A DNA stretch of 64,000 nucleotides from Sminthopsis crassicaudata. Taxonomy: Eukaryota. The notes below the pieces were generated by a model. The model saw nothing but the letters and a program-made list of their open reading frames with translations, searched no databases and was not told the DNA's origin. The stretch lies in the NCBI RefSeq assembly GCF_048593235.1, contig NC_133620.1, positions 270,149,765-270,213,764 on the forward strand, read 5' to 3'. This document shows positions 90 through 39,649 of this stretch, in pieces. Each line of letters begins with the position of its first letter. Within the stretch, counting starts at the first letter, position 1. The position numbers and the translations under genes are program-made.

Positions 90-722
90 ATAAAAAACTA
101 TTAAGAAACATTTTCCCAAAAAGGTTGTGGTTATATATATACAGATGGAGGCAATCATTATTTAAATTTTCCATTCCCTGCAAAAGCACATTTTATCAAT
201 AATTAGAGATAACCTACAAATAAACAAAACAAATTTTATTTTAAAATTATGGTGATATGGAGTAGCATTAGAAAAGAGAGGTTTGAGTATATGTTGAATT
301 ATATGTTCTATTAAAGGGATAAAATATCCTAACCTATTTTTGGAGGTTATTTAATTGAGGGGAATGGAAAAATATATTCTTCTAGCTCTGACATAGAATG
401 AATCTTAATTCCCAAAGAGAAAAAATAAAAACAAGATTTACCCATGCTCCCTTTTGATTATTTCTACAACATTCAATAGGTCAAGAACCAGTAACCTAAG
501 GTCATCTATCAGGCTTTTCTTCCCTTCATCAATTTCTCCTTTTGATTTGACATTTGCTGTACTGATATTTTTTCTAGTAGAAACTGAAGCTGCTGAAGAG
601 TACACAGATGTCTGAAAAGGAAAAATACAAATTCAGCAAAACTTTATTACAGAATAAGTAGCTTAAAAATCATGTGGAAAGCAGTAAGCTAATTGTGGAA
701 AGGGGAAGTTGTCTAAAGAAAT
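90..722. repeat. Segmental duplication block A: paralog of CD2AP intron 16/exon 16/intron 15 (parent ~33520-34340)
   Basis: Collinear same-strand matches on both sides of the exon, e.g. gataacctacaaataa, aatcattatttaaatttt, gcttaaaaatcatgtggaaagcagtaagctaa, gttgtctaaagaaat. Confidence 0.93.
442..611 (-). CDS. Diverged paralogous copy of CD2AP exon 16 (exon 16'), open frame, intact splice sites; expression unknown
   Basis: ttgtatttttccttttcag|ACATCTGTG...GAGCATGG|gtaaat; 170 nt, phase 0/2; TSVYSSAASVSTRKNISTANVKSKGEIDEGKKSLIDDLRLLVLDLLNVVEIIKREH(G); by hand alignment 27/56 aa and ~74% nt identical to 34036-34211, with one 6-nt indel. Confidence 0.6.
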
Positions 723-1680
723 GATAGGAAACTTCTGGGGGTGGAATCAAGTACAGGAAGCCCTATAGCTAAACTTTCCCAACATTTACCTCCAAACAAC
801 TTTAAAATGAAGTCTTAAATTAAATTCTGGAGTAATAAAGCCAACAAAAGAATGGGGTAAGATGTTTTTCAGCCTGATACACATTATAAGGGCAAAAAGA
901 GAGATCTGTGATGCTAGTATATAAGCTAGTCCAGAACCCATAAGGCAGCAAGACTAGCTCTGGGTATCAGAAGCAGCAGTAGCCATCAGCAGCTTTGGCA
1001 GCTCCTGGTGAGAAAGAAAATACATGGGATATCTGTTCTAGTTCCAAATACAGGACCAGTGCTGTTTGAAAACTCCATTGTCTGTATCTATTTCTGTATC
1101 ATAGTTCTAGGCCATAAAAGAATGCTTTGGATCACAAGGGAGCAGGGATCTTGTGGAACTGCATCACTTGTGGTCACAAGGGAACAGGGATACTAATGAG
1201 TAGCATTGCTTGTGTTTTGAAAGGGATCAGGGGCCCTTCCTGGGTAAGGACCAGACCACAGACCTGGAGAGCAGTATTCACACCTCTCCACAGATCATAT
1301 CACTTTAAAAGCGCTGAAACCCCCCAGAACTAGCTCTGAGAACAACAGTGTGAGAATTCCTGAACTTGGGGTAATGCCCCTGTACTCTCACCCCAGGAAC
1401 AGAGTTCAATTTTAAAGTAAGGTTCAAAGTCAAGAAATAAGACTAAAAAATTTAACCAAGAAAGCAACAATAACAACAACAAAATAACCTGACCAATAGA
1501 AATTATTATAATAACATGGAAGATGATCAAGACACAAACTCAGAAGAAGAAATTATGTCAAAACAGTTACAAGTAACATCTCTGCTTCCTCTCCCAAAAA
1601 ACGTGAATTGTACACAAGCCCAATAAGAATCCCTGGAAGAGCTAAAATTATTTTGAAAATCAAATAAAATAAATACACAT
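723..1680 (+). mobile_element. Degenerate L1 5'UTR and ORF1 start
   Basis: Resembles the marsupial L1 5' region, with an ORF1 N-terminus-like segment (atggaagatgatcaagacacaaactcagaagaaga); many stops. Confidence 0.6.
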
Positions 1681-3400
1681 TATAAAACAAACTCAATAAA
1701 TCAATCAATATTTCTATATATCACCAACAAAGTCCTACAAGAACTAGTAAAAGATGCCCCATTTAAAATAACGTAAACTTTATAAAATATTTAGGAGTAT
1801 ACTTACCAAGACTCAGGAACTACTCATGACATGAACATAATTATAAAATATTTTTATACAAATAAAGATATATTTAAATAATTAAAGAAATATTAATTGT
1901 ACAAGAGCAGGCAGAGTCAACATACTAAAAATAATTTACCTAATCTATTTATTCAATGCCATCTCAATCAAACTACCAAAAATTATTTTACTAAGCTAGA
2001 AAAAATAATAATAAAATCCATTTCAAAAATCCAAAGGCTAATAAGATCAAAGGAATTTTTAAAAATGGAAAGGAAGGAGTATTAATAGTACCAGATCTTA
2101 TATTATAGAATACTATATACTATTATATAGAATTATACTATATTATAGAATCAGAAAATTATCAGATACTAGCTAAGAAAAGTGCATCAGTAGAATGGAG
2201 TAGACATACAATATACAGTATCAAATGATTATAGTATTTGACAAGTGTAAAGATTAGCTTTTGGGAACAAGTATACATTGTTTGGCAAAAAAAAAAAAAA
2301 TTGTTGGGAAAACTGGAAAGTCTGGCAGAAATTATATATAGACCAATATCTTACACTATTTTTCAAGAGAAGGTCAAAATAGATACAGAACACCCAAATA
2401 TAAAAGGAGATATTGTAAGAAAACTAGAAGAACATGGAACATCATCTATCAGACTTATGGAGAGGAGAAGAATTTATGAATAAACAAAAGATAGAAACCA
2501 TTGTGAGATGTAAAATGGATAATTTGATTACATTAAATTAAAAAGGAGGTGTACAAATAAAACCAATGTAGCCAAAATTAGAAGGAAAGAAGAAAATGGG
2601 AAAAATCTTATATGCAATTTCTTGGACAAAAATGTATAGAATTTTGTCAAATTTATATGAGTCATTCCCCAACTGATAAATGGTAAGTTTTTTATATATA
2701 AAGAAATCAAAACTATACATAGTCATATAAAAATGCCCTAAATCATTAGTGCTTAAAGAAATGCAAGCTAAAACAACTTGGAAATACCATCTCATTACTT
2801 ATTGGATTAGCAACAATGATAGAAAGGAGAAATAACAAATGTTATAGGAAATGTGAAATAAATGGGACATAAATACACTGTTTATGAATAACAACTGTGA
2901 ATGGATGTAACTATTTTGGAGTATAATTTGAAATTATGCCCAAAGAGTAATAAAACTGTATACCCTTTGATGCAGAAATACTAGTGTTAGATCAGGGGAA
3001 AAGGAAGAGAACTTATATGATCTAAAATATTTATAGCAGCTCTCTTTGTGATAGCTACGAAATAGAAATTGAAATGATGCCCATGAATTGGAGAATGACT
3101 AAACAAATTGTGCTTCACAATTGTGATGGAATGTTCCTATATTATGAGACATAATGAACTGGTTAATTTTAGAAAAAAATGGGAAATTTTGCATGAAATA
3201 ATAAAAAAGCTAAGTAAGCAGAACTAAGAAACATTATAACTAGTAACAGCAATATTGTTTGAATAATTATTACGAACAAGTTATTCTAGGTATTATAAAC
3301 ACTCCAATCAACAACAAAAGATCTATGAGAAGAAAGATACTATCCACCTCCACAGAAAGAACTGATAAACAGAAAGAAGTAGGCATAATATTGTTTTATA
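1681..3400 (+). mobile_element. Degenerate L1 ORF2 3' half and 3'UTR
   Basis: L1 ORF2 C-terminal motifs (aaatatttaggagtatacttaccaagac; ctatttattcaatgcc; ccctttgatgcagaaatacta); frameshifted. Confidence 0.85.
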
Positions 3401-3859
3401 CATATTTATTTATTTCCAGATATATTGTAAAGACTTTATTTCTTTAAATAGAAAAAGTTGCTGGCAAGAGAATCTGGTAAAGAAAATACCAGCAAAGCAT
3501 AAAGTAAAAATACTAAAGACTTTTGACAAAATTATATAAAGAAAAAAAATCTTAACTAAATGCTATATATTTCCACTGAAAGTCTATGAAAGTTCTGTAT
3601 CTGACATATATATATGTGACTAAATTCTAACATATTTATATATGCATATATATGTGTTTCTCTATATTTGTATGCAGAAATATATGCATGTATATACATG
3701 CATGTAATATATACAAGCATATACATATAGGTATGTATGTGTATATATATAAACATATACATATAGTTATAAATCTGTGTTAAAGGGTAACATTTTCTAG
3801 TATAAGGAGGAAGAGATAGAGGAATATAGTTCAAATCTTAAAATGTAACAAATAATAAA

Positions 3860-6800
3860 TTAAATTTAAAAAATCAAATAAGAAAAAATCTAGAAAAGAA
3901 ATGAGTGAGGCAAGAAAATTATGAAAACAATTAACAGCTTGGTAAAAGCAGCACAAAAAATACTGGGGAAGAGAGACTCCTTAAAAACATTAGTAGTCCA
4001 CACCTGTCAGATTGGCTAAGATGACAGGAACAAATAACGATGAATGTTGGAGGGGATGTGGGAAAACTGGGACACTGATACATTGTTGGTGGAGTTGTGA
4101 AAGAATCCAGCCATTCTGGAGAGCAATTTGGAACTATGCCCAAAAAGTTGTCAAACTGTGCATACCCTTTGACCCAGCATTTCTGTTATTGGGATTATAT
4201 CCCAAAGAAATACTAAAGAGTGGAAAGGGACCTGTATGTGCCAAAATGTTTGTGGCAGCTCTGTTGTAGCTAGAAACTGGAAGTTGAATGGATGTCCATC
4301 AATTGGAGAATGGTTGGGTAAATTGTGGTATATGAAGGTTATGGAATATTATTGCTCTGTAAGAAATGACCAGCAGGAGGAATACAGAGAGGCTTGGAGA
4401 GACTTACATCAACTGTTGCTAAGTGAAATCGGCAGAACCAGAAGATCACTATACACTTCAACAACAATACTGTATGAGGATGTATTCTGATGGAAGTGGA
4501 AATCTTCAACATAAAGAAGATCCAACTCACTTCCAGTTGATCAATGATGGACAGAAATAATTATACCCAGAGAAGGAACACTGGGAAGCGAATGTAAATT
4601 GTTAGCACTACTGTCTATCTACCCAGGTTACTTATACCTTCGGAAGCTAATAATTAATGTGCAACAAGAAAATGGTATTTATACACATATATTGTATCTA
4701 GGTTATATTGTAACACATGTAAAATGTATGGGATTACCTGCCATCGGAGGGAGGGAGTGGAGGGAGGGAGGGGATAATTTGGAAAAATGAATAAAAAAAA
4801 ACAACATTAGTAGTCAAATGGAAAAATAAAAATAAAAGATCATTGAGGAAAATCATTCCTTAAAAATTAGAATCAGGCAAATGACAGCTAGAGATTCCAT
4901 GAAATATCAAGAAACAATGCAACAAAGTCAAAAGAATACAAAAATAAAAGACAATGTGAAATATTTCATTGGGGGAAAAAACTGATCTGAAAAACCAGGT
5001 AGAGATAATTTAAGAATGATTTGACTACTTGCAATCCATGATCAGAGAATGAACCTAGACATCATTTTTCAAGAAACTACAGAGGAAAATTGCTCTGATA
5101 ACCTAGAACCAGAGGGCAAAATAGACATTTAAAGAAATATACTGCTCACCACCTGGAAACCATTCCAAAATGAAAACTCCCAGGAATATTATAACTGAAT
5201 TTCAGAGCTCCCAGGTCAATGAGAAAATACTTCAAGAAATCAGAGAGAACAAAAAAAAAAGTTAAATACCTAAATAAAGATCAGTTAAGATCACATAGAT
5301 TTAGCCACCACCACATTAAAGGAGCAGAAGTCTTGGAATATAATATTCTGGAAGGCCAAAAGAGCTAGGATTAGAATCAAGAATAATGTACCCAGAAAAA
5401 GTAAGTATAATTGGGGAAGGGGGAGGGAAAGGAATTGGATATTAAGTGAAATAGAAAAAGTTTTGAGCATTCCTAATAAAAAAAGCAAGGATTGAATAGA
5501 AAATATTATTTTCAAATACAAAACTTATAAGAAGCATAAAGAGGCAAATTTGAAAGAGAAACATAATAGACTCAATAAGGTTAAACTTTGATATAACTTC
5601 TAAGAAATTATTATTATTAGAACAATTAGAAGGACTATACATAGATAAAAGAAAGAGGAATGGGTTGATTATTTGGGGAAAATCTTAAAAAAAAAACCCT
5701 GGATGGGCTAGAAAAGGGGGAATATAAAGAGGAAGAATGGATGAAATTATCTCACATAAAAGAGGCACAAGAATGAAGGCTTTTACAGAGGAGGGGAAAA
5801 TATTGGAAGAAGAATGAGCAATGTCTAAACCTCACATCTGAACTGTTTCAAAGAGAGAAGAATATATATGTGTACATGTATACATGTATACTCATAATTG
5901 GGTACAGAAATTTCTCTTACTCAACAGGGCAGAAAGAGGGGAAGGGAAAAAGAAAAAAAGGTGATACGATAACAGGGAAAGGAGATTGAAAGTCAATGAT
6001 AAGGAGAAAAACTGATTTTTTAGTGGGATGAAAGAAAAAGAAATGGATGAACAACAGAAAATAGGATGGAGGGAAATGCAAAGTTAGCAATCATAACAGT
6101 GACTGTAAATGGGATGAATTCACCCATAAAGAAGCAGATAGCAGAATGGATTAAAAAAGAATCCAACACTATGTAATACACAAGAAATAAAATTGAAACA
6201 GAAGGATATAAATAGTGTTAAAATAAGGTACTAGAACAGAATTCAGTATGGTTTTGCTGAAGAAAAAAAGGCAGCAGTGGAAATCATGCTGTCAAAGCAA
6301 ATGCAAAAATAGACCTAATTAAAAGAGGTAAATAGGGACATTATATCTTGCTAAAAAGTACCACAGACAAGGAAGTGATATCACTACTAAATGTATACAC
6401 CAAACAGCATATCATCCAAATCCTTGAAGAAAAGTATAATGATTTAGAGGAGGTAATTAAAAGTAAATGCTATATTCATGTGGAGCCCTCAACTTCACCC
6501 TCTCAGAGCTAGATAAATTTAACCATAAAAATAAATAGGAAAAAATTTATGATGATAAATAGAATTTTAGAAAATTTAAATATAATTAAACCTCTGGAGA
6601 AACCTGAATGTGAATAGAATATGTTTTTCTCAGCTATACATAGTACTTTCTCAAATATACTATGGCATAAAAAGCTCACCAAAAATTCAGAAAATAGAAA
6701 TATTAAATGCATTAATGCACTGAATGCAATAATGCAAAATAAAATTATATTTAATCAAGGGCCGTGCAAGCATAAATTAAAATTAATTGGAAACTAATAT

Positions 6801-7720
6801 TATCCTAAAAAATTACTATGTCAAAGAAGAAATCATATAAACAATCAATAATTTCATTAAAGAGAATAACAGAGATGAAGTAATATACCAAAATTTGAGG
6901 TATGTGGCAAAAGCAGTACTTGAGAGAAATTTATACTCTAAATGTAAATATATCAACAAAAAGCAAATAGCAGATCAATTAAACAGGCATTCAACTATAA
7001 GAAAACTTTAAAAAGAACAAATTAAAAATTTGCAATTAAACACCAAAATGGAAATAATGAAAATCAAAGGAAGTTAATAAAATTGAAAGTTTAAAAAATT
7101 TAATTAATAAAATTAGGAGCTAGCTTTATGAAAAAAAGTGGATAAACCATTGGTTATTTTGATTACAAATAGAACCAGACTTCCAGAAACCAAAATTAAA
7201 AGGACAAATGTACCACCAAATAAAGAAAAAATTAAAGCAGTTATTAGGAACTATTTTTCCCAATTATATGCCAGTAAAACTGACAATCTAAATGAAAAAT
7301 ATGGATATTTGAAAAGCAGAAATTGCATAGATTAACAGAAGGAGGAATAACATATTTAAATAATCCTATTAAAAAAAATGAAAATGAAAACCATAAATGA
7401 GCTCCGTAAGAAAAAGTCAACAGGAGTAGATAAGATTCACAAGTGGATTCTATCAAATGTGCAAGAAATAATACCTCACAATACTATATAAAGTATTTGA
7501 AATAAAGTTGAAAAAGTCCTATTAAATTCCTTTTATGACTAAATATGGTTTGGATTCTTAAATTTGGGAGAGAGCAAAAACAAAAAGAAAGCTACAGGTA
7601 AATTTCTCCTAATTAATATTCATGCAAAAAATTTATGATTATAGCATTATATCACAAAAGTCACACACTGTTACCCAAAGGGATTTGTACCAAGCGTGTG
7701 GGCTGATTTAATATAAGGAA
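3860..7720 (+). mobile_element. Old L1: ORF1, inter-ORF region, ORF2 endonuclease to RT start (interrupted by a younger L1 at 3999-4802)
   Basis: ORF1-like coiled-coil/RRM segments; endonuclease start at ~6090 (gtaaatgggatgaattcacccataaa); heavily disrupted. Confidence 0.88.
3999..4802 (+). mobile_element. Young 5'-truncated L1 with 13-bp TSD
   Basis: ORF2 C-terminus ([22 protein letters not shown]), 3'UTR and A-tail; TSD aacattagtagtc at 3986-3998 and 4803-4815. Confidence 0.95.
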
Positions 7721-7812
7721 AAAAACTATAATCAAACTAACTATATTTCAAAGCATTAATCATCAAAACAACCTAATGATGGTGGAGCAGTGGAATAGAT
7801 TAGATATACAAA

Positions 7813-8048
7813 GTTGTTGTTTGTCCTTTGTTCTCAAAGAGGACAGTGACTTCAGGGAAGTGATGGCTTGAAAGTGAATTGGATTTAAGTGAGGGAGGAT
7901 TATGCAAGGTCACTTGCCTCACTTTCCTCTCTAGAACCATCAGCATCCAATGGCCAGATATAAATCAGGAGACTGGAGATTGCATTAGATGCAATATGCA
8001 ACCTTGGTTTTTTATAAGCTAAGATATTTAACAGGTCTCAGTTTGACT
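7813..8048 (-). mobile_element. RTE-dependent marsupial SINE (WALLSI-like)
   Basis: Begins gttgttgtttgtcctttgttctcaaagagg, i.e. a (CAA)n tail on minus; family assignment from recall. Confidence 0.6.
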
Positions 8049-8869
8049 AGAATTTAAAAAATTATTTATTGTCTATTATATGCCAAGTAACATAGAAGGT
8101 ACTGAGGTTACAATGACAAAAGTAAAATTTTAGTCCTTGAACTCAAAAAGATGATAATCAATCATAGGGAAAAATAAGAGAACATATTCACAAATGTGAA
8201 ATAACTAAAAAGTAAATGAAACACATTGAAGAGGTAAAAAGATAACAATATCTGAAATGATCAGTAAAAAACTTCATGTTACTAATAAGACTAATAAGTG
8301 CAACTTGAGCTGAGCTTTAATGGCAGTTACAGAAACATCAAGTCTGGCCACACAAAAAAATACAACACACTAAATAGAGTGAAGGTAATAATACATTTTA
8401 TATTACTTTTGTCTTTACTGTATTATGTCTTTACTGTATTAACAATTAAAGCTACATAAATTATTTTCTGGTGTTTTACAACATAGGATTTACTGTAAAA
8501 CAAAGCAATCAAGAATGGTACAACATATGATTTACTGGGAAACAAAGCAATCAAGAATGGCAGGTTTTTCCTAAATCATACTATCATAAACAATTATCAA
8601 AACTTTATGAAGTAGAAAAAATTTTGGGAAGATAGCAAAGTCAGAAAACTTTCAACTCTCCAAATTTCCTCTCAAAAAAAAAAAAAAGACAGAACATGTT
8701 GTTAATGCAGTAGAAATAAATATGGGTAAATACATTAATTGTCTCTAAAGATAATTTTAAAAGGTCATCAGGAAAGATGACCTCCAGAGGCAGAGGTTTT
8801 GCCTGAGAGAAATGCAAACATCTCCAGGCCAACTCTGAAGAATCAAGAAACAAGCCTTGGGAACAGCTG

Positions 8870-10260
8870 GGTTGAGAAGGGTTTACAATATACAGTAATA
8901 AATGACATTAATCTAGCATTTGATAAACCCAAACATCAAAATTTGGAGGGCAAAAAATTCACTAGGTTGTCAAAAATTTTTGGACAACTATAAATCACTT
9001 TGGCAGAAACTAAACAAAGACTAATATCTCACCCCATTTGCCAAGTGAATAAATGATTTAGACATAAAAGGTGATTACATAAATAAAATAGGGAAGCATG
9101 GAAAATTTTGTCTCCCAGATTTATAGATAAAAGTTTATGACCAAACAAAAAATAGAAAGGATCATGAGAGGTAAAATAAATGACTTTGATTATATGCAAT
9201 TTAAACATTTTTGCACAAATAAGCCATGCAGCCAAAATTAGAGAGCAGAAAACTGAGGGAAAAATTTTTACAGCAGATTTCTCTGATAAAGGCTTTTTAA
9301 AAAAATTAAATATATAAGAAACCAAGCCAAATTTATAAAAACAAAGCATTCATCAATTTAGGGGTGGATAAAGGGCATGAACAGGCATTTTATGTAGGGG
9401 GGAAAAAGCTATCATAGTCACAAGAAAAAATGCTCTAAATCATCAATTAGAGAAATGCAAATTAAAACATCTCATTCATAGCATCTCACACTTATCAGAT
9501 CAGCCAAAATGACAGAAAAGGAAAGTGACAAGGAATATGGAAAAATAGCTACACTAAAACATTGTTGGTAGAGTTGTGATCCAGTCCAACCATTCTAGAG
9601 AAGAATTTTAAAACACACCTAAAGGGCTAAAAAAGCAAACAAGCAAACAAACTTCACTCTCTTTAACCCAGTCATATCTCTCTTAGGTGTCCCAAAAAGA
9701 TTAAAGAAAAAGGAAAAGGATGTATATGTACAAAAAATATTTATAGTAGGTCTTATTATGATAAAGAATTTGAAATTGAGGTGATCCTCATGAATTTGTG
9801 AATGGCTGAAGAAATTGTGGTATATGACTGTGATGGAACATAATTGTACTATAGAAATGATAAGCAGAATGATCTCAAAAGACTTAATAATACTTGTACA
9901 TCAGCAAAATAACTGTTTGGACATGTATACATATATTGTATTTAATTTATATTTTAACATATGTAACATGTATTGGTCAACCTGCCATCTGGAGGGGAGG
10001 GTGAGGGGAAGGAGGGGAAAAGTTGGAACAAAAGGCTTGGCAATTGTCAATGCTGTAAAATTGCCCATGCCTATATCTTGTAAATAAAAAGCTATAGTAA
10101 AAAAAAAAAAATTTAAGAATACTTGTACATAGTAACAGCACTATTGTGAGGATGAAAGAATTACTCTGATTAAGAAAATGATCTAAGATAATTCTAAAGA
10201 ACTCACAATGAAAAATACTATTCAGCTCCAGGGAAAGAACTGATGAATTCTTAATATAGA
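8870..10260 (+). mobile_element. Degenerate L1 ORF2 3' part and 3'UTR
   Basis: ctagcatttgataaacccaaa, cattgttggtagagttgtga and other L1 C-terminal motifs; many stops. Confidence 0.85.
9902..10117 (+). mobile_element. Young L1 3'-tail insertion with 13-bp TSD
   Basis: G-rich 3'UTR plus A-tail; TSD aatacttgtacat at 9889-9901 and 10118-10130. Confidence 0.92.
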
Positions 10261-11119: not shown

Positions 11120-11723
11120 TAATTTTACCTTGGCTTTTTCTATTATAAGGGAAGGCTAAATAAATGGTGGTAGAGTTAGGTCTGGAAATGACTCTGGTAT
11201 AAACTCAAAAGGCATTTATAAATAATATAGAGGAAAAGAAAAATATTTCTGAAAATCTGGATAATTAATAAATTTTCTAGGATAAATTTCCTTAAAGATG
11301 TGTGTGGGATAAAATCATTTTAAATGTTATAATTCAGTATTTTAGTATTCTGAGTTATTACAATGAAAATATATTTCCAAAAATGAATAATATATATTCT
11401 GGTTAATAATAAGAACAAGCATGAATACAGTGTTTTAATGTTTGCAAAGCACTTTACAAATATCTCATTTTATCTTTACTATAATCCTGGGAATCAGGTG
11501 CTATTATCAGAGCCATTTTATAGTAAAGGAACCTGAGGCTAAGTAACTTGTCTAAAGTCACAGAGCCTAATAAGTGTCTGAGGTCATATTTGAATTTATA
11601 TCTTTCTTGCACTATATCCACTATATCACTTAATTGTCTCTTAGATTTACTAAAACATACAATAAATACAGTGGGTTTGAAAAAGAAAATAAAAGATCAT
11701 TAAAGGGATTAAAAAGCCAATTA

Positions 11724-11785
<62 letters not shown>

Positions 11786-12350
11786 TGAGTTTTGGGGGTT
11801 TTTTTGAGGAGAGAAAAAAATTATAGCATTTAAAATTATTCTACAAAAAACTTTTTAGCAATATAATTTGTGAAAATAGGATGTATTTATCAAAAATGAT
11901 CTTCAGCAGCAAAGCTTAAAGGGCATTCTTTATGTGCACTATAATTTAGTTCCTTTCTTGCTTTTTTCTTTGCAAATAATTCCCTTCTTTAATCTATTTA
12001 GATAGTTAAGTGGCTCAGTAGAATTGAATTTGGAAATACCTAAGATTCAAATATAGGTTTTGGAACTTACTAGCTGAATAATCCTGGGAACCTCTATTTT
12101 CCTCAGTTTTCTTCATTTGTAAAATAGAGATGTCAGTAAGCACTATATCAATACCGGCTATTATCACTTCCTTATAAAAATGTATTTTACAATTTCCTTG
12201 TGTTCTACATATTTGAACTTGTAAACCATGATTTAAAAAGAGTACTCATAAAATCAATGGCTGATATCTTAGTTTACTTTTAAAAGTCCATATATGCATT
12301 AAAATCAATCAAGTGAAACATGTATTAAGCACCTACTATATATGCTAGAC
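11120..12350. repeat. Segmental duplication block B: paralog of CD2AP intron 15 (parent ~35830-37400)
   Basis: Collinear matches in unique sequence and shared old MIR/L2 copies: ctttttctattataag, ctggataattaataaattttctaggataaa, gttattacaatgaaaat, tgggtttgaa, aaagggcattcttta, gttctacatatttgaacttgtaaacc, aaatcaatcaa. Confidence 0.9.
11728..11781. repeat. (TA)27 microsatellite
   Basis: Perfect TA run. Confidence 0.97.
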
Positions 12351-23848: not shown

Positions 23849-24969
23849 AAGACTTAACATTTTTAGTTAATAATGGGACATCATTTGGTGAATAATCATC
23901 ATGAAAAAGATATTTATTAAAGAAATCTTTATCAATACCTTTTCTTGATTTGGCTGCCAAGTCCATTCAAAGTCCTAGCCTGAAGCTTGCCTCCCCCAAG
24001 ACCATTTAAAGCTCTGTTTCCTTAGGAACTATCTCATGCCCAGCTGGTTTGATACTATGGTAATTCTGTCCACCTGTCTTGTTTCCAGGTCACAGAGCTC
24101 ACCCATAAACTGACATTTTCTATCTCCTTTGTTGGTGAGCTCTACACTGTATAGCACCTTCAATAATCCTAACTTACTTTGTTCTAGGATGCCTAAGCCC
24201 ATTTCTCAAGACTAACATTATTCTGGTTGAAGTTTTTGTGTGTGGATCAAGGAATATAATATTAAAAGAGTCAAAATTCCAAGTGACTGAAAAAGTAGAT
24301 TTGGGGAAGTGGGGGTGGAGGGTGTAGTACAATTGTGGCAATACTATTCAGGAAATACTAAGAAATCTGTAAAAAAGTCTGATCCCTTTAAGAAGGATTT
24401 AAAAGCCATGGACAGTCAAGTTGAATGACTACAATCTCTTACAGAGTATCCACACTGAGATCATGGACCAATCGAAGTGGTATGCCTATAGTTATAGATT
24501 ATAATACTTAAATCCAAAATTAGGTATAAAGTTATGGGGGACATTTTATCTTCTAATTCAGTTTCCATGAGCCTAGACACTGTTTAAGGTCATTTCACTG
24601 CATTATCAAATACTTCCATTTTTAAACTTAGAACTTCCAAATATTATCTATCAAAGCTTTAAATTATGGTGAGATCCAACTATTTCCTGAAACACAAGCA
24701 AATACAATTGTGTTAATAGAAAATATCTCAAACAACAAAAAACACGCATATAGTAGCAGTATTTTCTTTTTATTTGAATTTTTTTTCCAGGGAAAACATG
24801 CATTTTACAGTATCTGTAAACACAAGAATATGTTTACACTGACTTTGAATTCAGTACATTTTGGAATGTTGGAATACTCATCAAACCCAAAGTAATATGC
24901 AACAGCAGCAAAAGAGAGAGGAATGCATTAGATTAGGACATTTTATGGTTAAAAATACTCATAGCAGCA

Positions 24970-27781
24970 GCTTTGGAAAGATGATTTATTAAATCACGTC
25001 ATTGCACTTGGTCATTTTATTGCTACAGCAAAACAAGGCCATTTTATTATTGTAACACTTTTCATTTCTGAGTATAACTGATTGTCTTATTCTGCTCATC
25101 CATTGTAAGTTTTCATGTGGACAAAACATTTAAATATAATTTGGAGCACATTTTGTTGTGCTATGATCACAGTGAGAAAATAGAAAATAAATTTCTATGA
25201 CATCAGGTCTATTTTTCCATTTTCATCAACAGAGAAATCTTAATAGTAAATAAAAAAAATACAGACACAACAAATATTTTTAAAATTGGGAGTATTCATC
25301 TTTGATGTTTTTAGGATATGTGAATACTAAACCAATGCTACATGTCAAAAACTGTGGCATACTTGTATATGCAGTGCATTCTCAGATATTTCAGCATTTT
25401 AATGGCCACCACAGATATCACATAGTTGACTCAAAGCTTTGTGCTTATGTGTGCACATTTGACAAGAACATTTAATCAACTCATGAAAATTGCACCCCTT
25501 TCAGAATGTAAATTCCACATTCCTACATATTGTATTTCTATATACAATAATATGATGATACAGCTCTCATGAACATGAATTTCTAGTGACATTATATATA
25601 ATACCCCAAAACTGTATTGGCAAGCTGCCATACTGAAGGAACATTTTTCTTCTTTAAATGAAGACAGATAAGTGGAGACCATTTAATGCAACTGCTTTTT
25701 TCTTTTCCTTAGGAAGTTAGGGATAGAGCAGCTAATGGATACCAGTGACTTTCTTCTAAAGATTTTTTGCAAATCTCATATTTAAAAAACAAGTTTACTG
25801 TCCTGATGTGTTTTAATTAACTTATGAATGATCTTACTACTAGCAAACCAAGGAAAGAAAGAAAAACTTCCTTGAACATACTTTCTAATGAAGATGATTC
25901 CTAGATTGTAGAGAGCTTAATTTTTTTTTCCTTTAGCACTATGTGTCTATCATTAAAACCAAGGCAGGGAAGGGGAGAGGAATGTTTTTTTGGGAAAAGG
26001 TTTGGATAAAAAAAAATCTTCATTTGCTTGGTCAAATACATGGAACAATGGTCGCTAATTTTGATGGGTAATGATTTGATTGGGACAGAAATCTATGACC
26101 TTCATAATGAGGTAACACATACTTATTTAACCAAATCAGCTCCTCCCAAAAGCAATATATGCATTATTTCAACATCAATATGAATCAGTATTTTGATTAT
26201 CTTGTACTGGGGGAAAATAATTATAATTTAAAAAAACCCAAACATTTCAGCTGTACAAAATTAAATTGCAAAGCGAAAAATTTGTATTAAGTTTTAAGTT
26301 GAAATAACAAGGAAAAAAAAATTACAACTTTCTGGCACAGCCACCCTACAACCCATCATAAGTCTTATTTTATCCGCTGGAAATCTACTGGCTATTTGCA
26401 ATAATGGAGTTACACTTTTAAACTGCAGCTATGCTTTTAAAAAGACATTAGTTACCAGTAAAACTATAAATCCTAAGTAGGACTATGTTCATATTTGAGG
26501 GTTTTGACATATTTTTAGGAATATATTTTAAAATTGTGTCAAGGTTGGTGAATTTAAGGAGATGTTGACCATGTGATTTATGAAAATGCAATACTTTAAA
26601 AAACAAATGTGATGATAGAACAAATGTGATGACACTGTGATCTCTGAAGTAAAACAGCATTCTTTATAAAGTTAATATGTACTCGACAGTTCAACTTAAC
26701 TCCAAAAAGTTAATTAGGCAAATAATATTTCTTAAATTGAATATTTACATGATGAGTTGACTGCTCTGAAAGTATGAACTCTTGATGAATTTCCTAAAGA
26801 TTTGCATTTTATTTTAATAATGGTACTTTAAAAGGGGAGAGGATTAAATTATAAGACCATAGGCTAGGTAATATTTGATTAAGCAGAGAAATACAGCAAT
26901 AAGGCTGGTGTTTACATGTTAAATGTGCTACAGTTTCTAAGCACATTGAACTGAAGGGACAACTTTCTGGCTGCTTAGCTATGACAGATTTAAGAATATC
27001 TTATTCTTTTAAAAATATACTTAATGATTGAAATACAGTTTAATAAATTCCTTTTTTGAACCCTATAGTGCAAATGGCATGAAATATTTCAACTATCAAA
27101 TTTACTTTATTTCATAAGCTATTTAAATTTGCATATGTGATTGATTCATCTGCTTTATAGCTAACACATTTCTGTTTTGTCACCCAAATGATAAACAGCA
27201 CTGCAGACATATAGGCACAACAGTGTAATCTTGGGTAGGAAAGCTAAAAATAAAATATATATATATATTTTAATATACATACATATATACACATACAAAT
27301 ATCCTATGTCCCTTTTGCACTATGGGAAAAATAATTTCTACAAGTTAGTGATTATTAAGCTAATGTGTCCCTCCCACAGTCTATTTTGCAGGTTACTTGA
27401 AGATATATATCAACCTATTTATAGTATAGACGTCTTTGAAAATTACACTGTTGGTATTCAATAAAAATCTATTACCAACTTCCTCTCCTTTTTATACAGG
27501 TTCAGTAGTATTTTCATGCAAACCAGGAAAAAAGAGGTTTGCAATTCCAGCACAGTAAGAAATAAGGCCTCTTTTTCATATTGGCAAATAAAATAAAATA
27601 AAATACACAATTTTCATCTTTCCCCTTCTGTAAGATATGAAAACTCATGTACTCATTTTTTCCCCCTATAGCACGCCAAAAATCTTTTGTTACTTGGAAG
27701 TAAACAAGTCAGTTTTCAGTTCATATTCTCGTTTATGAATCCCTGGCCAAAGAAGAACACTGAGTCTACGTCACACCTCCC
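24970..27781 (-). other. CD2AP: CD2AP 3'UTR (distal end approximate)
   Basis: ~2.8 kb of AU-rich sequence after the stop with no recognisable repeats, ending at a cluster of AATAAA hexamers. The end is inferred, not shown by transcript data. Confidence 0.7.
24985..25048 (-). terminator. Cluster of three canonical polyadenylation hexamers (AATAAA on minus)
   Basis: TTTATT on plus at 24985-24990, 25016-25021 and 25043-25048. Confidence 0.6.
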
Positions 27782-27823
27782 TCAAGAAGACAGGGCTACT
27801 TTTTTCAGCTTTTCTATTTCCAC
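27782..27823 (-). CDS. CD2AP: CD2AP terminal exon 18 equivalent, coding part (42 nt incl. TGA)
   Basis: cctttttag|GTGGAAATA...TCTTCTTGA; VEIEKLKKVALSS*, matching the CD2AP C-terminus. Exons 9-18 total 993 nt = 331 codons with no internal stop. Confidence 0.96.
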   Translation of the reverse strand: MEIEKLKKVALSS

Positions 27824-31727: not shown

Positions 31728-31791
31728 CTCTAGGTTACTTCTAATTGTCTTTTCCTCTTCCAATTCTTTTCTTAGTTTTTCCAGTTCCTTC
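31728..31791 (-). CDS. CD2AP: CD2AP exon 17 equivalent (64 nt)
   Basis: tttttag|GAAGGAACTG...CTAGAG|gtaata; (G)KELEKLRKELEEEKTIRSNLE; phase 2/0. Confidence 0.96.
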
Positions 31792-34035: not shown

Positions 34036-34211
34036 CCATGTTCCTTTTTGATTGCTTCTACAACACACAGTAATTCAACAACTTGTGTTCTGAGGTCATC
34101 TAGTATGTTTCTCTTCCCATCATCAAATTCTCCTTTTGTTTTGGCATCTACTGAACTGAGGAAAGTTGTTCTAGGACATGAAGCTGCAGAACCTGAAGTA
34201 TACCCAGGTGC
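34036..34211 (-). CDS. CD2AP: CD2AP exon 16 equivalent (176 nt; start of C-terminal coiled coil)
   Basis: tttttcag|GCACCTGGG...GAACATGG|gtaagt; APGYTSGSAASCPRTTFLSSVDAKTKGEFDDGKRNILDDLRTQVVELLCVVEAIKKEH(G); phase 0/2. Confidence 0.96.
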
Positions 34212-35020
34212 CTGAAAAAAAAAAAAAAGAAAAGAAAAGTAACCAATATATAGGCAAAACTATATTGTACAGTAAATAGCTTAAAAGCCATGTAGAAAGC
34301 AGTATGCTAACTAAGAAAGAGGGGAGTTGTTTAAAGAAATAGGATACAGAGGAAGTTTACTCATAAATCCAAGACATTAAAAAACACTTCAAAGATGAAA
34401 AGAAGAGCAAGTAATGAATACAAAAAAAAAAAAAAAAAGTAATGAACTTTTAAGAATAAAGATTTTTTTAAAGCTCAGAATTTAATTCAAAAAACCATAT
34501 TAAGGGCTTACTATACATATTCCATTATGCTAAATGTTAGTGATTCAAAGATAAATCTCTGTTCTTCAGGGAGCTTACTTATATTTGGTTTGATAAGATA
34601 CATGCAGTGAAGTAAATGCAAAAATCACAAAGTATTTTCTAGGAGAAAGGACTAATAACAGGAGAGGATCAGGAAAGATGAATTTAAGAAGTCATACCTA
34701 AGTTTTACTTCAAAGGAAGTTGGGGATTCATAGTCATAAAAGTGAGGAGAGAGCATTCCAGACTGGAGAGAAAGGGGGGCTGGTTAGAGCCTACATAAAG
34801 GCAAGGAGAGAGGAGCTGGGATATTGTATGTGAAGAATGTTAAGATATCAATTTCACTAAAACAGAGAGTATGGGAATAGGAATAATATAAAAGAAAACA
34901 AGAAGTCAAATTATAGAAGGCAGAATGAACTGAGGCTAGGAGAGATAATAAGATTTTCTTTAAGGAATAGGGTAATTGTTTTGTTTTCTTTTAATTTTCT
35001 TTCTTTTTTTTTCTTTTTTT

Positions 35021-35660: not shown

Positions 35661-35696
35661 CCCCCCCAAAATCTTTATTATTTTTTTTGGGGGGGT

Positions 35697-35824
35697 GGCA
35701 ATTGGAGTTAAGTGACTTGCCCAGGGTTATACAGCTAGGAAGTGTTAAGTGTCTGAGTCACATTTGAACTCAGGTTTTCCTGACTTCAGGATTAGTGCTC
35801 TATCCACTGAGCCACCTAGCTGCC
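35697..35824 (-). mobile_element. WSINE1-type SINE
   Basis: aattggagttaagtgacttgcccagg...ccactgagccacctagctgcc. Confidence 0.9.
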
Positions 35825-35950
35825 GCTAGCTAAATTGATTTTAACTTTTTCTGTTATAAGTGAAGTCAGTGAGTAGTGGTGGAGATAGATCTGGATTAAC
35901 TGTCATATAAAATCAAAAAACATCTATAAAACATTCATATAAAGGGAGAA

Positions 35951-36106
35951 CAGGCAGCTAGATGATATAGTAGATAAAGTACCAACCCTAAAGTCAAGAG
36001 GCTCTAAATTCAAATACAGATTCAAACACTTGACACTTAGTAGTTATGTGACCCTGGATAAGTCACTTAACCCATGACTGTCTCACAAATAAATGAATGA
36101 ATAATA
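35951..36106 (+). mobile_element. tRNA-derived SINE (absent from the duplicate block)
   Basis: caggcagctagatgatatagtagataaagtacc...gtgaccctggataagtcacttaaccc...aataaatgaatgaataataa. Confidence 0.85.
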
Positions 36107-37379
36107 AAGGAATATATCTCAAACACTGGACAGTTAATAATTTTTCTAAGATAAAGTTTTTTGCAAAGTACTAAAAGATAACATTATTATTGTTACAATT
36201 GAATAACTTAATATTCCAAGTTATTACAGTAAAAATATTTTCACAAATGGGAAGTTATACAAAGTTACTTCAGTAAAATGGAAGTTATATATTCTGGCTA
36301 TTAATATTAGCTAGCATTAATGTAATGCTTTCAGGTTTGCAAAGCATTTTAAAAATAGTATCTTATTTACTTCAATTCTGGGAAGAATTATTAGATCCAT
36401 TTTTACAGAAAAGGAAACAGGCAGATAGAGGCTAAGTGACTTGTACAAAGTCACAAAACTACTAAGTGTTTGAGGCTAGATTTTAACTCAGATATTAATA
36501 ACTCTAGGTCCAGTACCCCTGTATCACTTAGCTGCCTCTTAACTTATTATAATATTTAAAATAAGACAGAAAATAAATGCATTGGGTTTGAAGAACATCA
36601 CAGCTCATTAAAGGTAATAAAAATCTGATTACATAGTTTGGTTTGGTTTCATTTCGTTTTTAAAGAAAAAAAGATGATTTTATAGTACTTAAATGATTCT
36701 ACTTACAGCATTAGTAACATCATCAGTAATATCAATTGTGAAAAAATACATATATGAAAATAATTTTCAGTAATAGAGGGCAAAGGGCATCCTTTATATA
36801 TCATATAACTCAGTTCCCAGTTTTGCTTTTCTCTTTGCAAAATATTCCCTACTATACATCTAAGGGCTCAGCAAATAAAGTGCTAGAACTGGATTTGGAA
36901 AGACCTAAATTTAAATGCAGCCTCTAAAACTTTCTAGTTGAACGATGCTGAGAGTTATCACTGATCCTTTGTCTTCCTCAGTTTTCTTCATTTGTAAAAT
37001 AGGGATAGTAAAAGCACCTATCTTCTTCCTCAAGTTGTAGTGAGGATCAATTAAGATAATATCTCTAAGCATTTCCAGATATTATTATTTAGCAAAACAT
37101 TTCTCTATCAGAATTAGTAAAAATTTTATAATCTCCTTGTGGGTGGTTCTACATGTTTGAACATGTAAACCTCAATGATTTAGAGAATATACACTATTCC
37201 CAGTATCAATTAATGATTAACAATATTATATGATGAAGGCATATACATATGTAGTGTGACTAGTAATGACTACTATTCTATTTTTACAATATAATGAATA
37301 ATACTTGGTTAAGTATTTCCTTAAACCTTCAGTCACTAAATCAGTTAATTTTTATTTTAGGACAGTCAATCAAAAAAAA

Positions 37380-38500
37380 AATCAATCAACCATAAACATT
37401 AAATGCCTATGTATCAGGAACTGTCTTCAGAGATAGGGATACATAAAGATGCAAAAGATAAGTTAAAGTTATTACCCTCAAGAAGCTTACAATCTAATAG
37501 ACAAAGGACACCTAGATAGGGCAGTGGATAGAGCACCAGCCCTGAAGTCAGGAGGACCTGAGTTCAAATCTGGCCTTGGATAGCTGTGTGACTCTGGGCA
37601 AATCTCTTAACCCCAATTGCCTCAGCAAAAAAATGAAAAAAAAAAATCTAATAGTGACTTAGAAGACAAGAGAAAATATCCAGAGCTAAGAGACTGAGCT
37701 TCTTATTCACAGAGCAATCAGAAGGCTGAATCATTGGATCAAAGAGTAAGTGTAAAAAGAATGGAAAGATATGAAGGGGCTAGATTACAAACTCTACTCT
37801 GATTGCCAAATAAAGCATTTTATATTTGCTCTTCAGAGACAAAAGGAGAACTTTACAGAGTAAACACAATTAGACTAGTGTTTTATGAAAGCCCTTTAGT
37901 CTTTGAATGGAGGATATATTAGAATGAACTATCCACAACAATCTAGGCATGAGGTGATAAGGGTGTGTACTTAGAGCCATGGCAGTTGCCAGAGGAAAGA
38001 ACAACTGCAAAAGCAAAATCAACAAGCATTCACAATAGCTTAAATATTTGGGGGGGGGGAGAAAGAAGGGGTGTTGGGGTCAAAATGTGAGAGTGGCAGA
38101 TGAGAGATAGTGAAGAATATAGGATAATTTCTAAATTGGGAATCTTAGGGAAGGAGTGGATTGTGTTGTCCTCTATAGTAAAAGGGAAGGTGGGGGAGAG
38201 AACAAAGATTTAGTGGGAAAGATGAGTTCCCGTTTTGAACACCTTTTCTCCCATCCACTCTGGGTATCTTGAGTTTACATATCTACTAAGCACTGAATTC
38301 AAGATGGCTGAAAGGCAGCTAAAGATGCAAGACTGCAGAGTTTCAGTCAGGACAGGTAGATATGAGAATCATTGTATAGAAATGGTAATTTTGAAAAACC
38401 CCTATAGTTAGAGGCTGTAATCTGGCTGAAGGAATAGTCAGAGAGATATGAGAACCAAGAGACAGTGGTATCCTAAAAACCTAAAGAGGTTAGGAACATA
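37380..38500 (-). mobile_element. L2 fragment (contains the SINE at 37501-37644)
   Basis: L2 3' end rc aatcaatcaaccataaacattaaatgcctatgt...ccctcaagaagcttacaatctaatag. Confidence 0.75.
37501..37644 (+). mobile_element. WSINE1-type SINE with 10-bp TSD
   Basis: A/B-box region gcagtggatagagcacc...gagttcaaatc; TSD aatctaatag at 37491-37500 and 37645-37654. Confidence 0.93.
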
Positions 38501-38623
38501 GAGGTAGCAAAGTACAGGGAATAAAGGACAAGCTTCAGGATCAAGATATCTGTTTCAAGTCCTATTTCTGACACATAATAGCTCTGTGACCCTGGACATT
38601 TACACTCTTAGCACTCCAGGTAA

Positions 38624-39259
38624 ATGAAAGTTTCCAGGAGCCAAGATGGAAGAGTAAAAGTTGCTCAAGTTTTCCCAGTTTCCCTTAAAACCACATGAAA
38701 CCAGGCCTCTTAACAGTCTGATTGAAGGAAACTACTCTCCAACTCAAAATACACTAGGAGGACTTCAAGAAAAGTCAGTCTCACTAGAATCAGATTACAC
38801 CTCTAACTGTAGGCGTTTTTCAGAATTACCATTTCTCTACAATGATTCTGGAGAGACAATTTAAAAATTATTGGTCTACCTAGAGGGCATGACCAAAAGA
38901 GTGAGCATGTATAGAATTCTTCAGATCGTCAAGGAAAGCTGAACTGATGGTATACTAGAATCAAAAGATGGAAATCATTGAAAGAATCCATCAATCACCT
39001 TCAGAAAGTTCCCCAGAAGGAAAACCTCAAGAAATATTGCTGCAAAACTTCAGAACTATAATATCAAGGGGAAAAAAATTCAATAAGCTGCCAGAAAAAA
39101 AAAATTACACAGAATCTGGCAGCTTCTACAATAAAGGATTGGAAGGCCTGGAATACCATATTCTAAAATGCAAAGGACCTAAGATTACAACCAAGAATCA
39201 ACTATCCAGTGAGACTGAGCATCATCTTTCAAGGGAGGAGATGAATTTTCCACAAAGTA
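38624..39259 (+). mobile_element. Internally deleted L1 derivative (5'UTR head fused to ORF1 C-terminus), 14-bp TSD, no A-tail
   Basis: Starts ...ggagccaagatgg; ORF1 RRM/CTD-like IERIHQSP segment; TSD agcactccaggtaa at 38610-38623 and 39260-39273. Confidence 0.88.
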
Positions 39260-39565
39260 AGCACTCCAGGTAACTTCAATGCTAGAAGCTGCAGTTGTCA
39301 CTGTGCATGGGAAGAGGTTCCCTTAGTTGAAATCCCCTGCTGTGCTAAATTCAGATTGGGATAACCCTTACTAAAAGTAGGATACAGAAACATAAAAAAA
39401 GGGTCACTAAGGAAAATGAAATGGAGTAAATTTCTTTAAAAGGTTATGGCTCCACCTTTTAGTCTTCAAATTCTATAATTATCCTTTTACACTGCTACTA
39501 AAGGCCAGAAATTATGACAATGTTGATCTAGCATAACAATCATCTTTTAAACAATAGCTATTTAC

Positions 39566-39649
39566 CTTTTTAATTTCAGTTGTCTTTAATTTGGCACCTT
39601 CTTCCTCACCTTTCTGAAACTTCAAGGTTTTTTCTGGACTTTGAATTGG
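39566..39649 (-). CDS. CD2AP: CD2AP exon 15 equivalent (84 nt)
   Basis: ttctgtag|CCAATTCAA...AAAAAG|gtaaat; PIQSPEKTLKFQKGEEEGAKLKTTEIKK; phase 0/0; no other in-frame GT before the next in-frame stop. Confidence 0.9.

What the first reader, a model, noticed from the sequence alone, without database searches (positions are those of the whole stretch)
442..39649. Phase arithmetic allows two new CD2AP isoforms: swapped or doubled coiled coil
Seen: exon 16' has a phase-0 acceptor, and both parent exon 15 (donor at 39566) and parent exon 17 (donor at 31728) end in phase 0. Inference: splicing 15->16' would swap in a divergent C-terminus (mutually exclusive last-exon modules). Splicing 17->16' would skip terminal exon 18 and its poly(A) sites and give a tandem double coiled coil. 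Either needs read-through past the AATAAA cluster at ~25 kb. Altered oligomerisation or actin-capping adaptor behaviour is plausible but untested.
Basis: inference. Interest (0 to 1): 0.72.

Follow-up and report, generated by a model that had tools for sequence, protein, structure and literature searches.

The report
Marsupial CD2AP doubled coiled-coil module

Summary
CD2AP lies on the minus strand. Exon 15 (39649-39566) and exon 17 (31791-31728) end in phase 0. Exon 16' (611-442, 170 nt) has a phase-0 acceptor, an intact ag/gt and an open frame. Exon 18 stops at 27782, and AATAAA signals sit at 25048-24774.

Exon 16' is part of an old tandem duplication. Intron-15 and exon-16/intron-16 homology is colinear at 65-77% identity and runs off the window start.

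The exon 16' peptide matches RefSeq CD2AP isoforms X3/X4/X6/X9 of Sminthopsis crassicaudata exactly. These read ...16-17-16'-17'-18', the "doubled coiled coil".

Of 57 marsupial CD2AP models from 11 species, 30 (from 9 species) have this architecture. None has the 15->16' swap.

Compared with its parent, 16' looks neutral (dN/dS 1.2). Across marsupials it is conserved about as well as the parent exons (coiled-coil part 90% versus 93%). All copies form one clade (100/100) inside marsupials. This fits a stem-marsupial duplication, early divergence, then purifying selection.

My one RNA read test saw no junction reads, so it is inconclusive.

The scan noted this same stretch before in this genome (s1-153243, s1-153315), not on other DNA. 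I found no paper describing it.

The parts
40580..40693 (-). CD2AP exon 14, carrying the capping-protein-interaction (CPI) motif
   Evidence: tblastn of Sminthopsis CD2AP X3 (P0126 residues 455-492) gives 100% identity. phmmer against PDB hits the CD2AP CPI peptides 3LK4_C (E 6.5e-15) and 3AA6_C.
39566..39649 (-). CD2AP exon 15 (84 nt, phase 0 to phase 0)
   Evidence: Read directly. Its peptide is found exactly in 19 dasyurid CD2AP models.
34036..34211 (-). Parent exon 16 (176 nt): Ser/Thr-rich linker plus the first part of the coiled coil
   Evidence: Its peptide is exact in 14 Sminthopsis and Sarcophilus models.
31728..31791 (-). Parent exon 17 (64 nt, ends in phase 0); donor used for both 17->18 and 17->16'
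   Evidence: Its peptide is exact in 19 models. In the annotated doubled isoforms the exon-17 peptide is followed directly by the exon-16' peptide.
27782..27823 (-). Coding part of exon 18 (13 codons plus stop), the canonical last exon
   Evidence: Its peptide is exact in the canonical isoforms P0123, P0130 and P0133.
24769..27781 (-). Presumed 3' UTR of exon 18, with AATAAA at 25048, 25021, 24990 and 24774. It is skipped as part of a 31-kb intron in the doubled isoform.
   Evidence: Searches give the signals only. The UTR end was not verified with RNA.
11242..12235 (-). Start of the duplicated copy, homologous to parent intron 15 (36111-37182)
   Evidence: Three colinear, same-strand blastn blocks at 65-80% identity.
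612..722 (-). Intron 15' just upstream of exon 16' (polypyrimidine tract and ag), homologous to the parent
   Evidence: 76.6% identity to 34212-34340.
442..611 (-). Exon 16' (170 nt): duplicated linker plus coiled-coil exon
   Evidence: 73.5% nt and 27/56 aa identity to exon 16. 56/56 aa to S. crassicaudata CD2AP X3/X4/X6/X9. tblastn of P0126 residues 600-657 maps to 614-441.
1..441 (-). Intron 16', homologous to parent intron 16. The duplication runs off the window, so exons 17' and 18' are not in it.
   Evidence: 65% identity with many indels, aligned down to base 23 or below.

Best explanation

Origin: in the marsupial stem lineage, a segment running from inside intron 15 through exons 16, 17 and 18 and the downstream DNA was duplicated in tandem. 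Exon 16' (611-442) is the first exon of the second copy. Exons 17' and 18' lie beyond the window start.

Why it fits in frame: exons 16+17 form a symmetric phase 0-0 unit that encodes a flexible linker plus most of the oligomerising coiled coil.

Splicing choice: the exon-17 donor (31728) can join either of two acceptors.
- Joining the exon-18 acceptor (27823) gives the canonical protein, which ends at the poly(A) cluster near 25 kb.
- Joining the exon-16' acceptor (611), about 31 kb downstream, treats exon 18 and its UTR as intron. The product reads ...16-17-16'-17'-18', about 78 residues longer, with two coiled-coil helices in series joined by a linker of about 12-25 residues.

What is shown: the anatomy and phases, the duplication, the exact identity to annotated isoforms, and the cross-marsupial conservation that indicates purifying selection.

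What is inferred:
- The annotated 17->16' junction reflects real mRNA.
- The choice is a competition between splicing and polyadenylation at exon 18 versus distal splicing.
- The second coiled coil changes self-association or valency of the CD2AP scaffold, for example a longer or two-site oligomerisation module or an intramolecular hairpin.
For: Anatomy and phases:
- Read directly from the sequence.

Duplication:
- Colinear, same-strand homology of intron 15, exon 16 and intron 16.

Matches to annotated proteins:
- phmmer of the 56-aa exon 16' peptide against 1.84 billion representatives gave one hit, bilby CD2AP XP_074046096.1, E 5e-26, with two matched stretches. Its sequence reads 16-17-16'-17'-18'.
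- A region search plus cluster listing gave 57 marsupial CD2AP models. Of these, 30 are doubled, in Sminthopsis, Sarcophilus, Antechinus, Macrotis, Petaurus, Notamacropus, Vombatus, Monodelphis and Gracilinanus. They come from RefSeq and from Ensembl/UniProt.
- The window's exon 16' peptide is identical to Sminthopsis X3/X4/X6/X9, and the other exons map at about 100%.

Conservation between species (mean pairwise identity):
- Coiled-coil part: 16' 89.7% versus 16 92.9%.
- 17' 89.4% versus 17 96.6%.
- Linker: 67% versus 68.5%.
- Dunnart versus opossum: 16' 43/57, 16 44/58.
- For comparison, paralogs within a species share only 14-16 of 26 coiled-coil residues.

Tree:
- All nine 16'+17' copies form one clade (100/100) inside a marsupial clade (100/100), with eutherians outside.
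- The stem is long (0.42) and the internal branches are short.

Structure:
- AlphaFold2 on the module predicts two long helices, 31-88 and 100-170, mostly at pLDDT above 88, with a low-confidence linker between them.
- A profile of the module matches the CIN85/SH3KBP1 coiled-coil structures 2N64 (3 chains) and 5ABS, E 3e-7 and 1e-6.

Sequencing runs:
- The run index reports 8 small, transcriptome-sized runs of organism A, from 5 studies, holding 11-12 of the 12 sampled words of exon 16'.
- In the three of these that I laid, the 2.6 kb of flanking non-exonic DNA is not covered.
Against: - No RNA junction was seen here. Read laying put nothing on 1-752 in any of four runs, including one true RNA-seq run of a sister species (about 6% of it read).
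- None of the index holders is on record as RNA.
- No Logan-assembled short protein fragment with the 17|16' junction was found.
- A full-length ORF assembled from a public run by Logan is on record only for a canonical opossum isoform (P0140), not for any listed doubled model.
- Gene models can chain homologous exons or suffer mis-mapping between exons 17 and 17'. Odd models exist, such as the 17->17' frameshift tail and read-through into intron 17'.
- Against its parent, 16' looks neutral: dN/dS is 1.19, differences by codon position are 19/15/11, and amino-acid identity equals the neutral simulation.
- Dromiciops and Trichosurus showed only canonical models in the sets retrieved.
Confidence: 0.8

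Rival explanations
1. Exon 16' is a decaying pseudo-exon of a dead partial duplicate. The doubled isoforms are artefacts of gene predictors that chain homologous, in-frame exons, or of reads mis-mapped between paralogous exons.
For: - Paralog dN/dS is 1.19 and there is no excess of third-position changes.
- Neutral simulation reproduces the amino-acid identity, and an open frame survives 45 random substitutions in 14% of trials.
- No reads or contigs were laid on the exon.
- Some annotated tails look like artefacts.
Against: - Conservation between orders of marsupials equals that of the bona fide parent exons.
- The frame, phases and module order are kept in nine species spanning the didelphid-australidelphian split.
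- The tree shows a long stem and then short branches, which is the opposite of continuing decay.
- Two annotation sources, RefSeq and Ensembl/UniProt, give the same architecture.
Confidence: 0.1
2. The module is mainly used as a mutually exclusive alternative C-terminus (15->16'->17'->18'), the reader's "swap", and not in series.
For: - The phases allow it, because the exon 15 donor and the exon 16' acceptor are both phase 0.
- Tandemly duplicated exons are often spliced mutually exclusively (established knowledge).
- Wombat X2 is a partial swap, 16->17'->18'.
Against: None of the 57 marsupial models contains 16' without 16-17.
Confidence: 0.05
3. The second copy is a separate transcription unit with its own promoter. 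It would make a small coiled-coil protein or a non-coding RNA that acts on CD2AP.
For: It lies about 24 kb beyond the parent poly(A) signals. Read-through over that distance needs explaining.
Against: - There is no CpG-rich or promoter-like island in 1-25 kb; GC is 26-43%.
- No ORF with a Pfam domain lies between the copies.
- Exon 16' has a splice acceptor and no start codon in its frame.
- All database models join it to CD2AP.
Confidence: 0.03

Closest known systems
RefSeq CD2-associated protein isoforms X3/X4/X6/X9 of Sminthopsis crassicaudata (XP_074166812.1, XP_074166813.1, XP_074166816.1, XP_074166819.1) and the equivalent doubled isoforms of eight other marsupials (for example Monodelphis X1 XP_007484103.1 / UniProt F7DAP7, Vombatus A0A4X2JZI6)
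   Same: They contain the window's exon 16' peptide exactly (56/56), placed after exons 16-17 and before 17'-18'.
   Different: Nothing differs; it is the same object. These are computed models, and I could not inspect their RNA support.
Canonical (eutherian-type) CD2AP with a single C-terminal coiled coil
   Same: Same gene and exon structure up to exon 17. Same CPI motif (PDB 3LK4, 3AA6). The canonical exon-18 ending is also annotated in every marsupial examined.
   Different: Eutherian sequences in the search carry one coiled-coil unit and fall outside the marsupial clade. The marsupial long form adds about 78 residues, made of a linker and a second coiled coil.
SH3KBP1/CIN85 coiled-coil domain (PDB 2N64, deposited with 3 chains; 5ABS)
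   Same: The duplicated unit is homologous to this oligomerising coiled coil (E 3e-7).
   Different: CIN85 is the paralogous gene. No tandem doubling of its coiled coil was seen or searched for.
Tandem exon duplication with mutually exclusive splicing (a general, well-described route to isoform diversity)
   Same: Tandem duplicate exons with preserved phases and splice sites inside or next to one gene.
   Different: Here the duplicate is a three-exon terminal module that includes a last exon and poly(A) site. The annotated use is in series (both copies in one protein), not mutually exclusive.

Membership tests
CD2AP (CD2-associated protein / CMS) | Exact or near-exact match of the window's exons to proteins named CD2AP | tested here: met
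   tblastn of Sminthopsis CD2AP X3 maps residues 305-579 and 600-657 onto eight minus-strand exons at 95-100%. Exon peptides are found exactly in 3-19 dasyurid CD2AP models.
CD2AP (CD2-associated protein / CMS) | Capping-protein-interaction (CPI) motif | tested here: met
   The exon 14 peptide hits the CD2AP CPI peptides 3LK4_C (E 6.5e-15) and 3AA6_C (E 2e-11).
CD2AP (CD2-associated protein / CMS) | Three N-terminal SH3 domains | not testable with these tools
   The SH3 exons lie upstream of the window, which starts at about residue 305 of X3. The matching database proteins carry precomputed SH3 Pfam hits PF14604, PF00018 and PF07653.
CD2AP (CD2-associated protein / CMS) | C-terminal coiled coil homologous to that of CIN85 | tested here: met
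   The module profile hits the SH3KBP1 coiled-coil structures 2N64 and 5ABS. AlphaFold2 predicts long helices.
Tandem segmental (exon-module) duplication | Homology extends into flanking introns and is colinear and in the same orientation | tested here: met
   Blocks 12235-11242 / 37182-36111 and 722-23 / 34340-33455 at 65-80% identity.
Tandem segmental (exon-module) duplication | Single origin that predates the speciation of its carriers | tested here: met
   All nine 16'+17' copies form one clade (100/100) within marsupials, with eutherians outside.
Functional (selected) coding exon | Conserved between distant species at the level of known coding exons | tested here: met
   16' coiled-coil part 89.7% versus 92.9% for exon 16. 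17' 89.4% versus 96.6% for exon 17. The frame is open in 9 species. Nucleotide dN/dS between orthologs could not be computed, because only proteins were available.
Functional (selected) coding exon | Junction reads or cDNA joining it to neighbouring exons | tested here: inconclusive
   The index says 8 probable-RNA runs hold the exon's words. Nothing was laid on 1-752 in four runs. No Logan fragments were found.
Mutually exclusive alternative exons (the "swap") | Transcripts carry one copy or the other, never both | tested here: not met
   All 30 models with 16' also carry 16-17. No 15->16' model exists among the 57.

The most novel reading that the evidence does not exclude
Marsupials have kept, for the whole of their crown-group history, a lineage-specific long CD2AP whose two tandem coiled coils give the scaffold a different oligomeric state or valency. 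Examples would be an auto-inhibitory intramolecular hairpin or chain-forming two-site association. The ratio of long to canonical form would be set by regulated skipping of exon 18 and its poly(A) sites. This would be an undescribed natural experiment on how CD2AP/CIN85 clustering is tuned.
Probability: 0.3. Interest if true: 0.5.

Novelty: already known. Interest (0 to 1): 0.3.

Why it matters
CD2AP is a scaffold of the kidney slit diaphragm, the immune synapse and endocytic actin, and a risk gene for Alzheimer disease. Its C-terminal coiled coil sets how many SH3 and CPI sites are brought together.

A clade-wide, selected doubling of that domain shows the oligomerisation module can be duplicated in series without loss of function. 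It also offers a ready-made natural variant for testing how coiled-coil valency affects clustering.

For the scan, the lesson is methodological in two ways. Phase arithmetic by eye correctly predicted an isoform that annotation pipelines already report. A paralog-only dN/dS test wrongly suggested a dead exon, and cross-species comparison reversed that verdict.

Tried and rejected
1. Paralog comparison of 16 versus 16': Nei-Gojobori dN/dS was 1.19, and the neutral simulation gave P(no stop) of 0.14 with amino-acid identity as expected. This first pointed to a pseudo-exon. I rejected that reading after the cross-species data, which fit early divergence followed by constraint.

2. The search for homologous proteins with the 56-aa peptide alone returned nothing. 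This says little, because only proteins of 31-98 aa were candidates.

3. A search with residues 560-691 of P0126, aimed at Logan-assembled short fragments spanning the 17|16' junction, found only canonical fragments of other animals.

4. Read laying on window 1-2800 with one true RNA run and three probable-RNA contig sets gave no cover on 1-752. It gave only repeat-like scraps of about 40 nt elsewhere. This is uninformative, because the tool drops human-like records. The mismatch with the index stays unexplained.

5. A search for another gene or promoter between the two copies found nothing. There is no Pfam hit on the five ORFs of 90 aa or more, and the region is AT-rich with no GC-rich island.

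6. The alternative tail ending ...KKPTTYANS (Sarcophilus X5, Antechinus X5) was not found in the window.

7. Three literature searches found no paper on CD2AP duplication or isoforms in marsupials.

I redid it from the stored alignment.

I searched exon by exon by reference, and full-length comparisons used database proteins by id.

10. The N run at 44337-44464 was left untouched.

11. I did not use human sequence. One human protein id appeared in a hit list and was not fetched or compared.
Full report
**Observation**

The gene is on the minus strand.

| Feature | Coordinates | Notes |
|---|---|---|
| Exon 15 | 39649-39566 | 84 nt, 28 codons, donor AAG\|gtaaat |
| Exon 16 | 34211-34036 | 176 nt, starts in phase 0, ends two bases into a codon |
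| Exon 17 | 31791-31728 | 64 nt, ends in phase 0 |
| Exon 18 | starts 27823 | 13 codons, stop at 27784-27782 |
| AATAAA signals | 25048, 25021, 24990, 24774 | downstream of exon 18 |
| Exon 16' | 611-442 | 170 nt, good polypyrimidine tract, ag acceptor, GG\|gtaaat donor, open frame |

- Exon 16' differs from exon 16 in length by one in-frame 6-nt gap.
- The phase arithmetic is therefore correct.
- One point is implicit in the finding: exon 16' ends in phase 2, so it cannot be terminal. It needs exons 17' and 18', which are not in the window.

**What the stretch is**

- Self-comparison shows that window 722-23 is homologous to 34340-33455, which is exon 16 plus both flanking introns (E 1e-52 and 9e-28).
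- Window 12235-11242 is homologous to 37182-36111 inside intron 15.
- These blocks are colinear and on the same strand.
- This is a tandem duplication that starts inside intron 15 and runs off the window start.
- In the copy, the stretch between the intron-15 homology and exon 16' is 11.5 kb, against 2.8 kb in the parent. The extra DNA is very AT-rich and A-skewed on the plus strand.
- Nucleotide identity is 73.5% in the exon, 76.6% in the 111 nt upstream and about 65% downstream.
- No other gene is evident between the parent poly(A) signals and exon 16'.

**First impression: a neutral relic**

- Against its parent, exon 16' gives dN/dS of 1.19.
- Differences by codon position are 19, 15 and 11, and amino-acid identity is 27/56.
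- I put the same 45 substitutions at random on the parent exon, using the intronic mutation spectrum. The frame stayed open in 14% of trials, and mean identity was 28/56.
- Taken alone, this suggests a lucky pseudo-exon.

**What changed the reading**

- phmmer of the 56-residue peptide against 1.84 billion representative proteins returned a single hit, E 5e-26, with two matched stretches.
- The hit is RefSeq CD2AP of the greater bilby, XP_074046096.1. Its C-terminus reads exon 15, 16, 17, then a 16'-like unit, a 17'-like unit and an 18-like end.
- I then searched with that C-terminal region and listed cluster members. This gave 57 marsupial CD2AP models from eleven species.

Classification by diagnostic motifs:

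| Architecture | Models |
|---|---|
| Doubled order 16-17-16'-17'(-18') | 30 |
| Canonical exon-18 end | 19 |
| Exon 17 joined to 17' in a shifted frame | 3 |
| Other tails | 4 |
| 16->17'->18' (wombat X2) | 1 |
| 16' without 16-17 | 0 |

- The doubled models come from Sminthopsis, Sarcophilus, Antechinus, Macrotis, Petaurus, Notamacropus, Vombatus, Monodelphis and Gracilinanus.
- The window's exon 16' peptide is identical over all 56 residues to Sminthopsis crassicaudata isoforms X3, X4, X6 and X9.
- The X3 protein maps on the window's exons at essentially 100%.

**Is the second copy under selection?**

I cut the modules out of one doubled model per species.

| Region | Duplicate: mean pairwise identity | Parent: mean pairwise identity |
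|---|---|---|
| Coiled-coil part of exon 16 | 89.7% | 92.9% |
| Exon 17 | 89.4% | 96.6% |
| Linker | 67% | 68.5% |

- Dunnart against opossum, 16' keeps 43 of 57 residues and 16 keeps 44 of 58.
- Within any one species the two copies share only 14-16 of 26 coiled-coil residues.
- In a maximum-likelihood tree all nine duplicate modules form one clade (100/100). That clade sits inside a marsupial clade (100/100), and five eutherians fall outside.
- The duplicate clade sits on a long stem (0.42) with short internal branches.
- This is the signature of one duplication after the split from eutherians and before the opossum/Australian split. That split is roughly 70-80 million years old by established estimates, which is my own knowledge. 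A burst of change followed, then purifying selection.
- The burst explains why the paralog dN/dS looked neutral.

**How it most likely works**

- Exons 16+17 (240 nt) and 16'+17' (234 nt by the proteins) are symmetric phase 0-0 units. Inserting the second unit between exon 17 and a last exon keeps the frame.
- The exon-17 donor chooses between two acceptors. The exon-18 acceptor, 3.9 kb away, gives the canonical end and polyadenylation near 25 kb. The exon-16' acceptor, 31 kb away, removes exon 18 and its UTR as intron.
- The duplicated unit is the oligomerisation domain. Its profile matches the solved coiled coil of the paralog CIN85/SH3KBP1 (2N64, three chains; 5ABS).
- AlphaFold2 predicts two long, confident helices (31-88 and 100-170) separated by a low-confidence Ser/Thr-rich linker. 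pTM is 0.29, so their mutual arrangement is not predicted.
- The CPI motif in exon 14 is intact.
- The effect on self-association or valency is inference only.

**RNA evidence**

This is the weak point.

- The run index found 18 holders of the exon's 12 sampled words, from 8 studies. None is on record as RNA.
- Eight small, transcriptome-sized runs of organism A, from 5 studies, hold 92-100% of the words. A sister species holds 58%.
- I laid one true RNA-seq run of the sister species (about 6% of it read) and three of the small contig sets on window 1-2800. Nothing fell on 1-752, and only repeat-like scraps fell elsewhere.
- The silent flanks show these are not whole-genome DNA runs.
- The contigs that carry the exon's words did not appear. 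They may have been removed by the tool's human-likeness filter, which would fit spliced CD2AP mRNA contigs. I cannot show this.
- So no 31728->611 junction read was seen or excluded.
- Support for actual splicing rests on the gene models of two annotation sources in nine species, and on the conservation.

**Comparison with what is known, and novelty**

- The object is a member of the CD2AP family by exact match, CPI motif and coiled coil.
- The mechanism is tandem exon-module duplication plus alternative last-exon choice. It is used in series and not mutually exclusively.
- The isoform is in RefSeq, Ensembl and UniProt, so it is already known at the annotation level.
- Three full-text searches found no paper that describes it.
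- The scan's own earlier notes on this same stretch (s1-153243, s1-153315) agree with the anatomy.

**Limits**

- Exons 17' and 18' of this genome were not seen, because they are off the window.
- Orthologous nucleotide dN/dS could not be computed.
- The N run at 44337-44464 was left alone.

Noticed in passing
database proteins P0149 (Sminthopsis X12), P0125 (Antechinus X3), P0129 (Sarcophilus 4-T4); relates to the window exon 17 donor at 31728: Three dasyurid models end in a 38-residue basic tail (...SPDFLKEV). It looks like exon 17 spliced directly to 17', read one base out of frame. The parent exon 17 read in that frame gives a similar peptide. This may be a real non-productive junction or mis-mapping between exons 17 and 17'.
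   Followed up: partly
P0162 (Vombatus ursinus CD2AP X2): The wombat model joins exon 16 to 17' and 18', skipping 17, 18 and 16'. It is an in-frame partial swap of the last 34 residues, and the only swap-like model found.
   Followed up: partly
window 442-611 versus runs X1, X2, X6: The index reports all 12 sampled words of exon 16' in these runs. Laying them puts no contig on 1-752. This may be the tool's human-likeness filter, but it is unexplained.
   Followed up: partly
window 1000-10000: The copy's intron 15' is about 8.7 kb longer than the parent's. It has 26-37% GC and a strong plus-strand A excess (AT skew +0.19 to +0.32). This suggests old LINE-type insertions antisense to CD2AP. They were not identified.
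   Followed up: no
window 4523-4796 and 54891-55164: A 274-nt inverted pair at 94% identity, far younger than the CD2AP duplication. It is probably a recent SINE-like element. Older copies at about 70% identity lie at 43547-43999 and 47817-48265.
   Followed up: no
window 44337-44464: A run of 128 N in an intron of CD2AP.
   Followed up: no
P0131 and P0132 (Sarcophilus X5, Antechinus X5); P0136 and P0138 (Monodelphis X7, X5): Further alternative short tails follow exon 17. The dasyurid one (...KKPTTYANS) is not encoded in this window with up to 4 mismatches, so it lies elsewhere or is absent in the dunnart.
   Followed up: partly
P0013, P0127, P0128, P0152 (Dromiciops); P0154, P0157 (Trichosurus): Only canonical single-coiled-coil models were retrieved for these two marsupials. 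The genomes were not checked, so this may be loss of the module, non-use, or incomplete listing.
   Followed up: no
window 1123-1214: A 42-nt tandem repeat of 2.2 copies at 73% match sits about 0.5 kb upstream of exon 16' (plus-strand coordinates).
   Followed up: no
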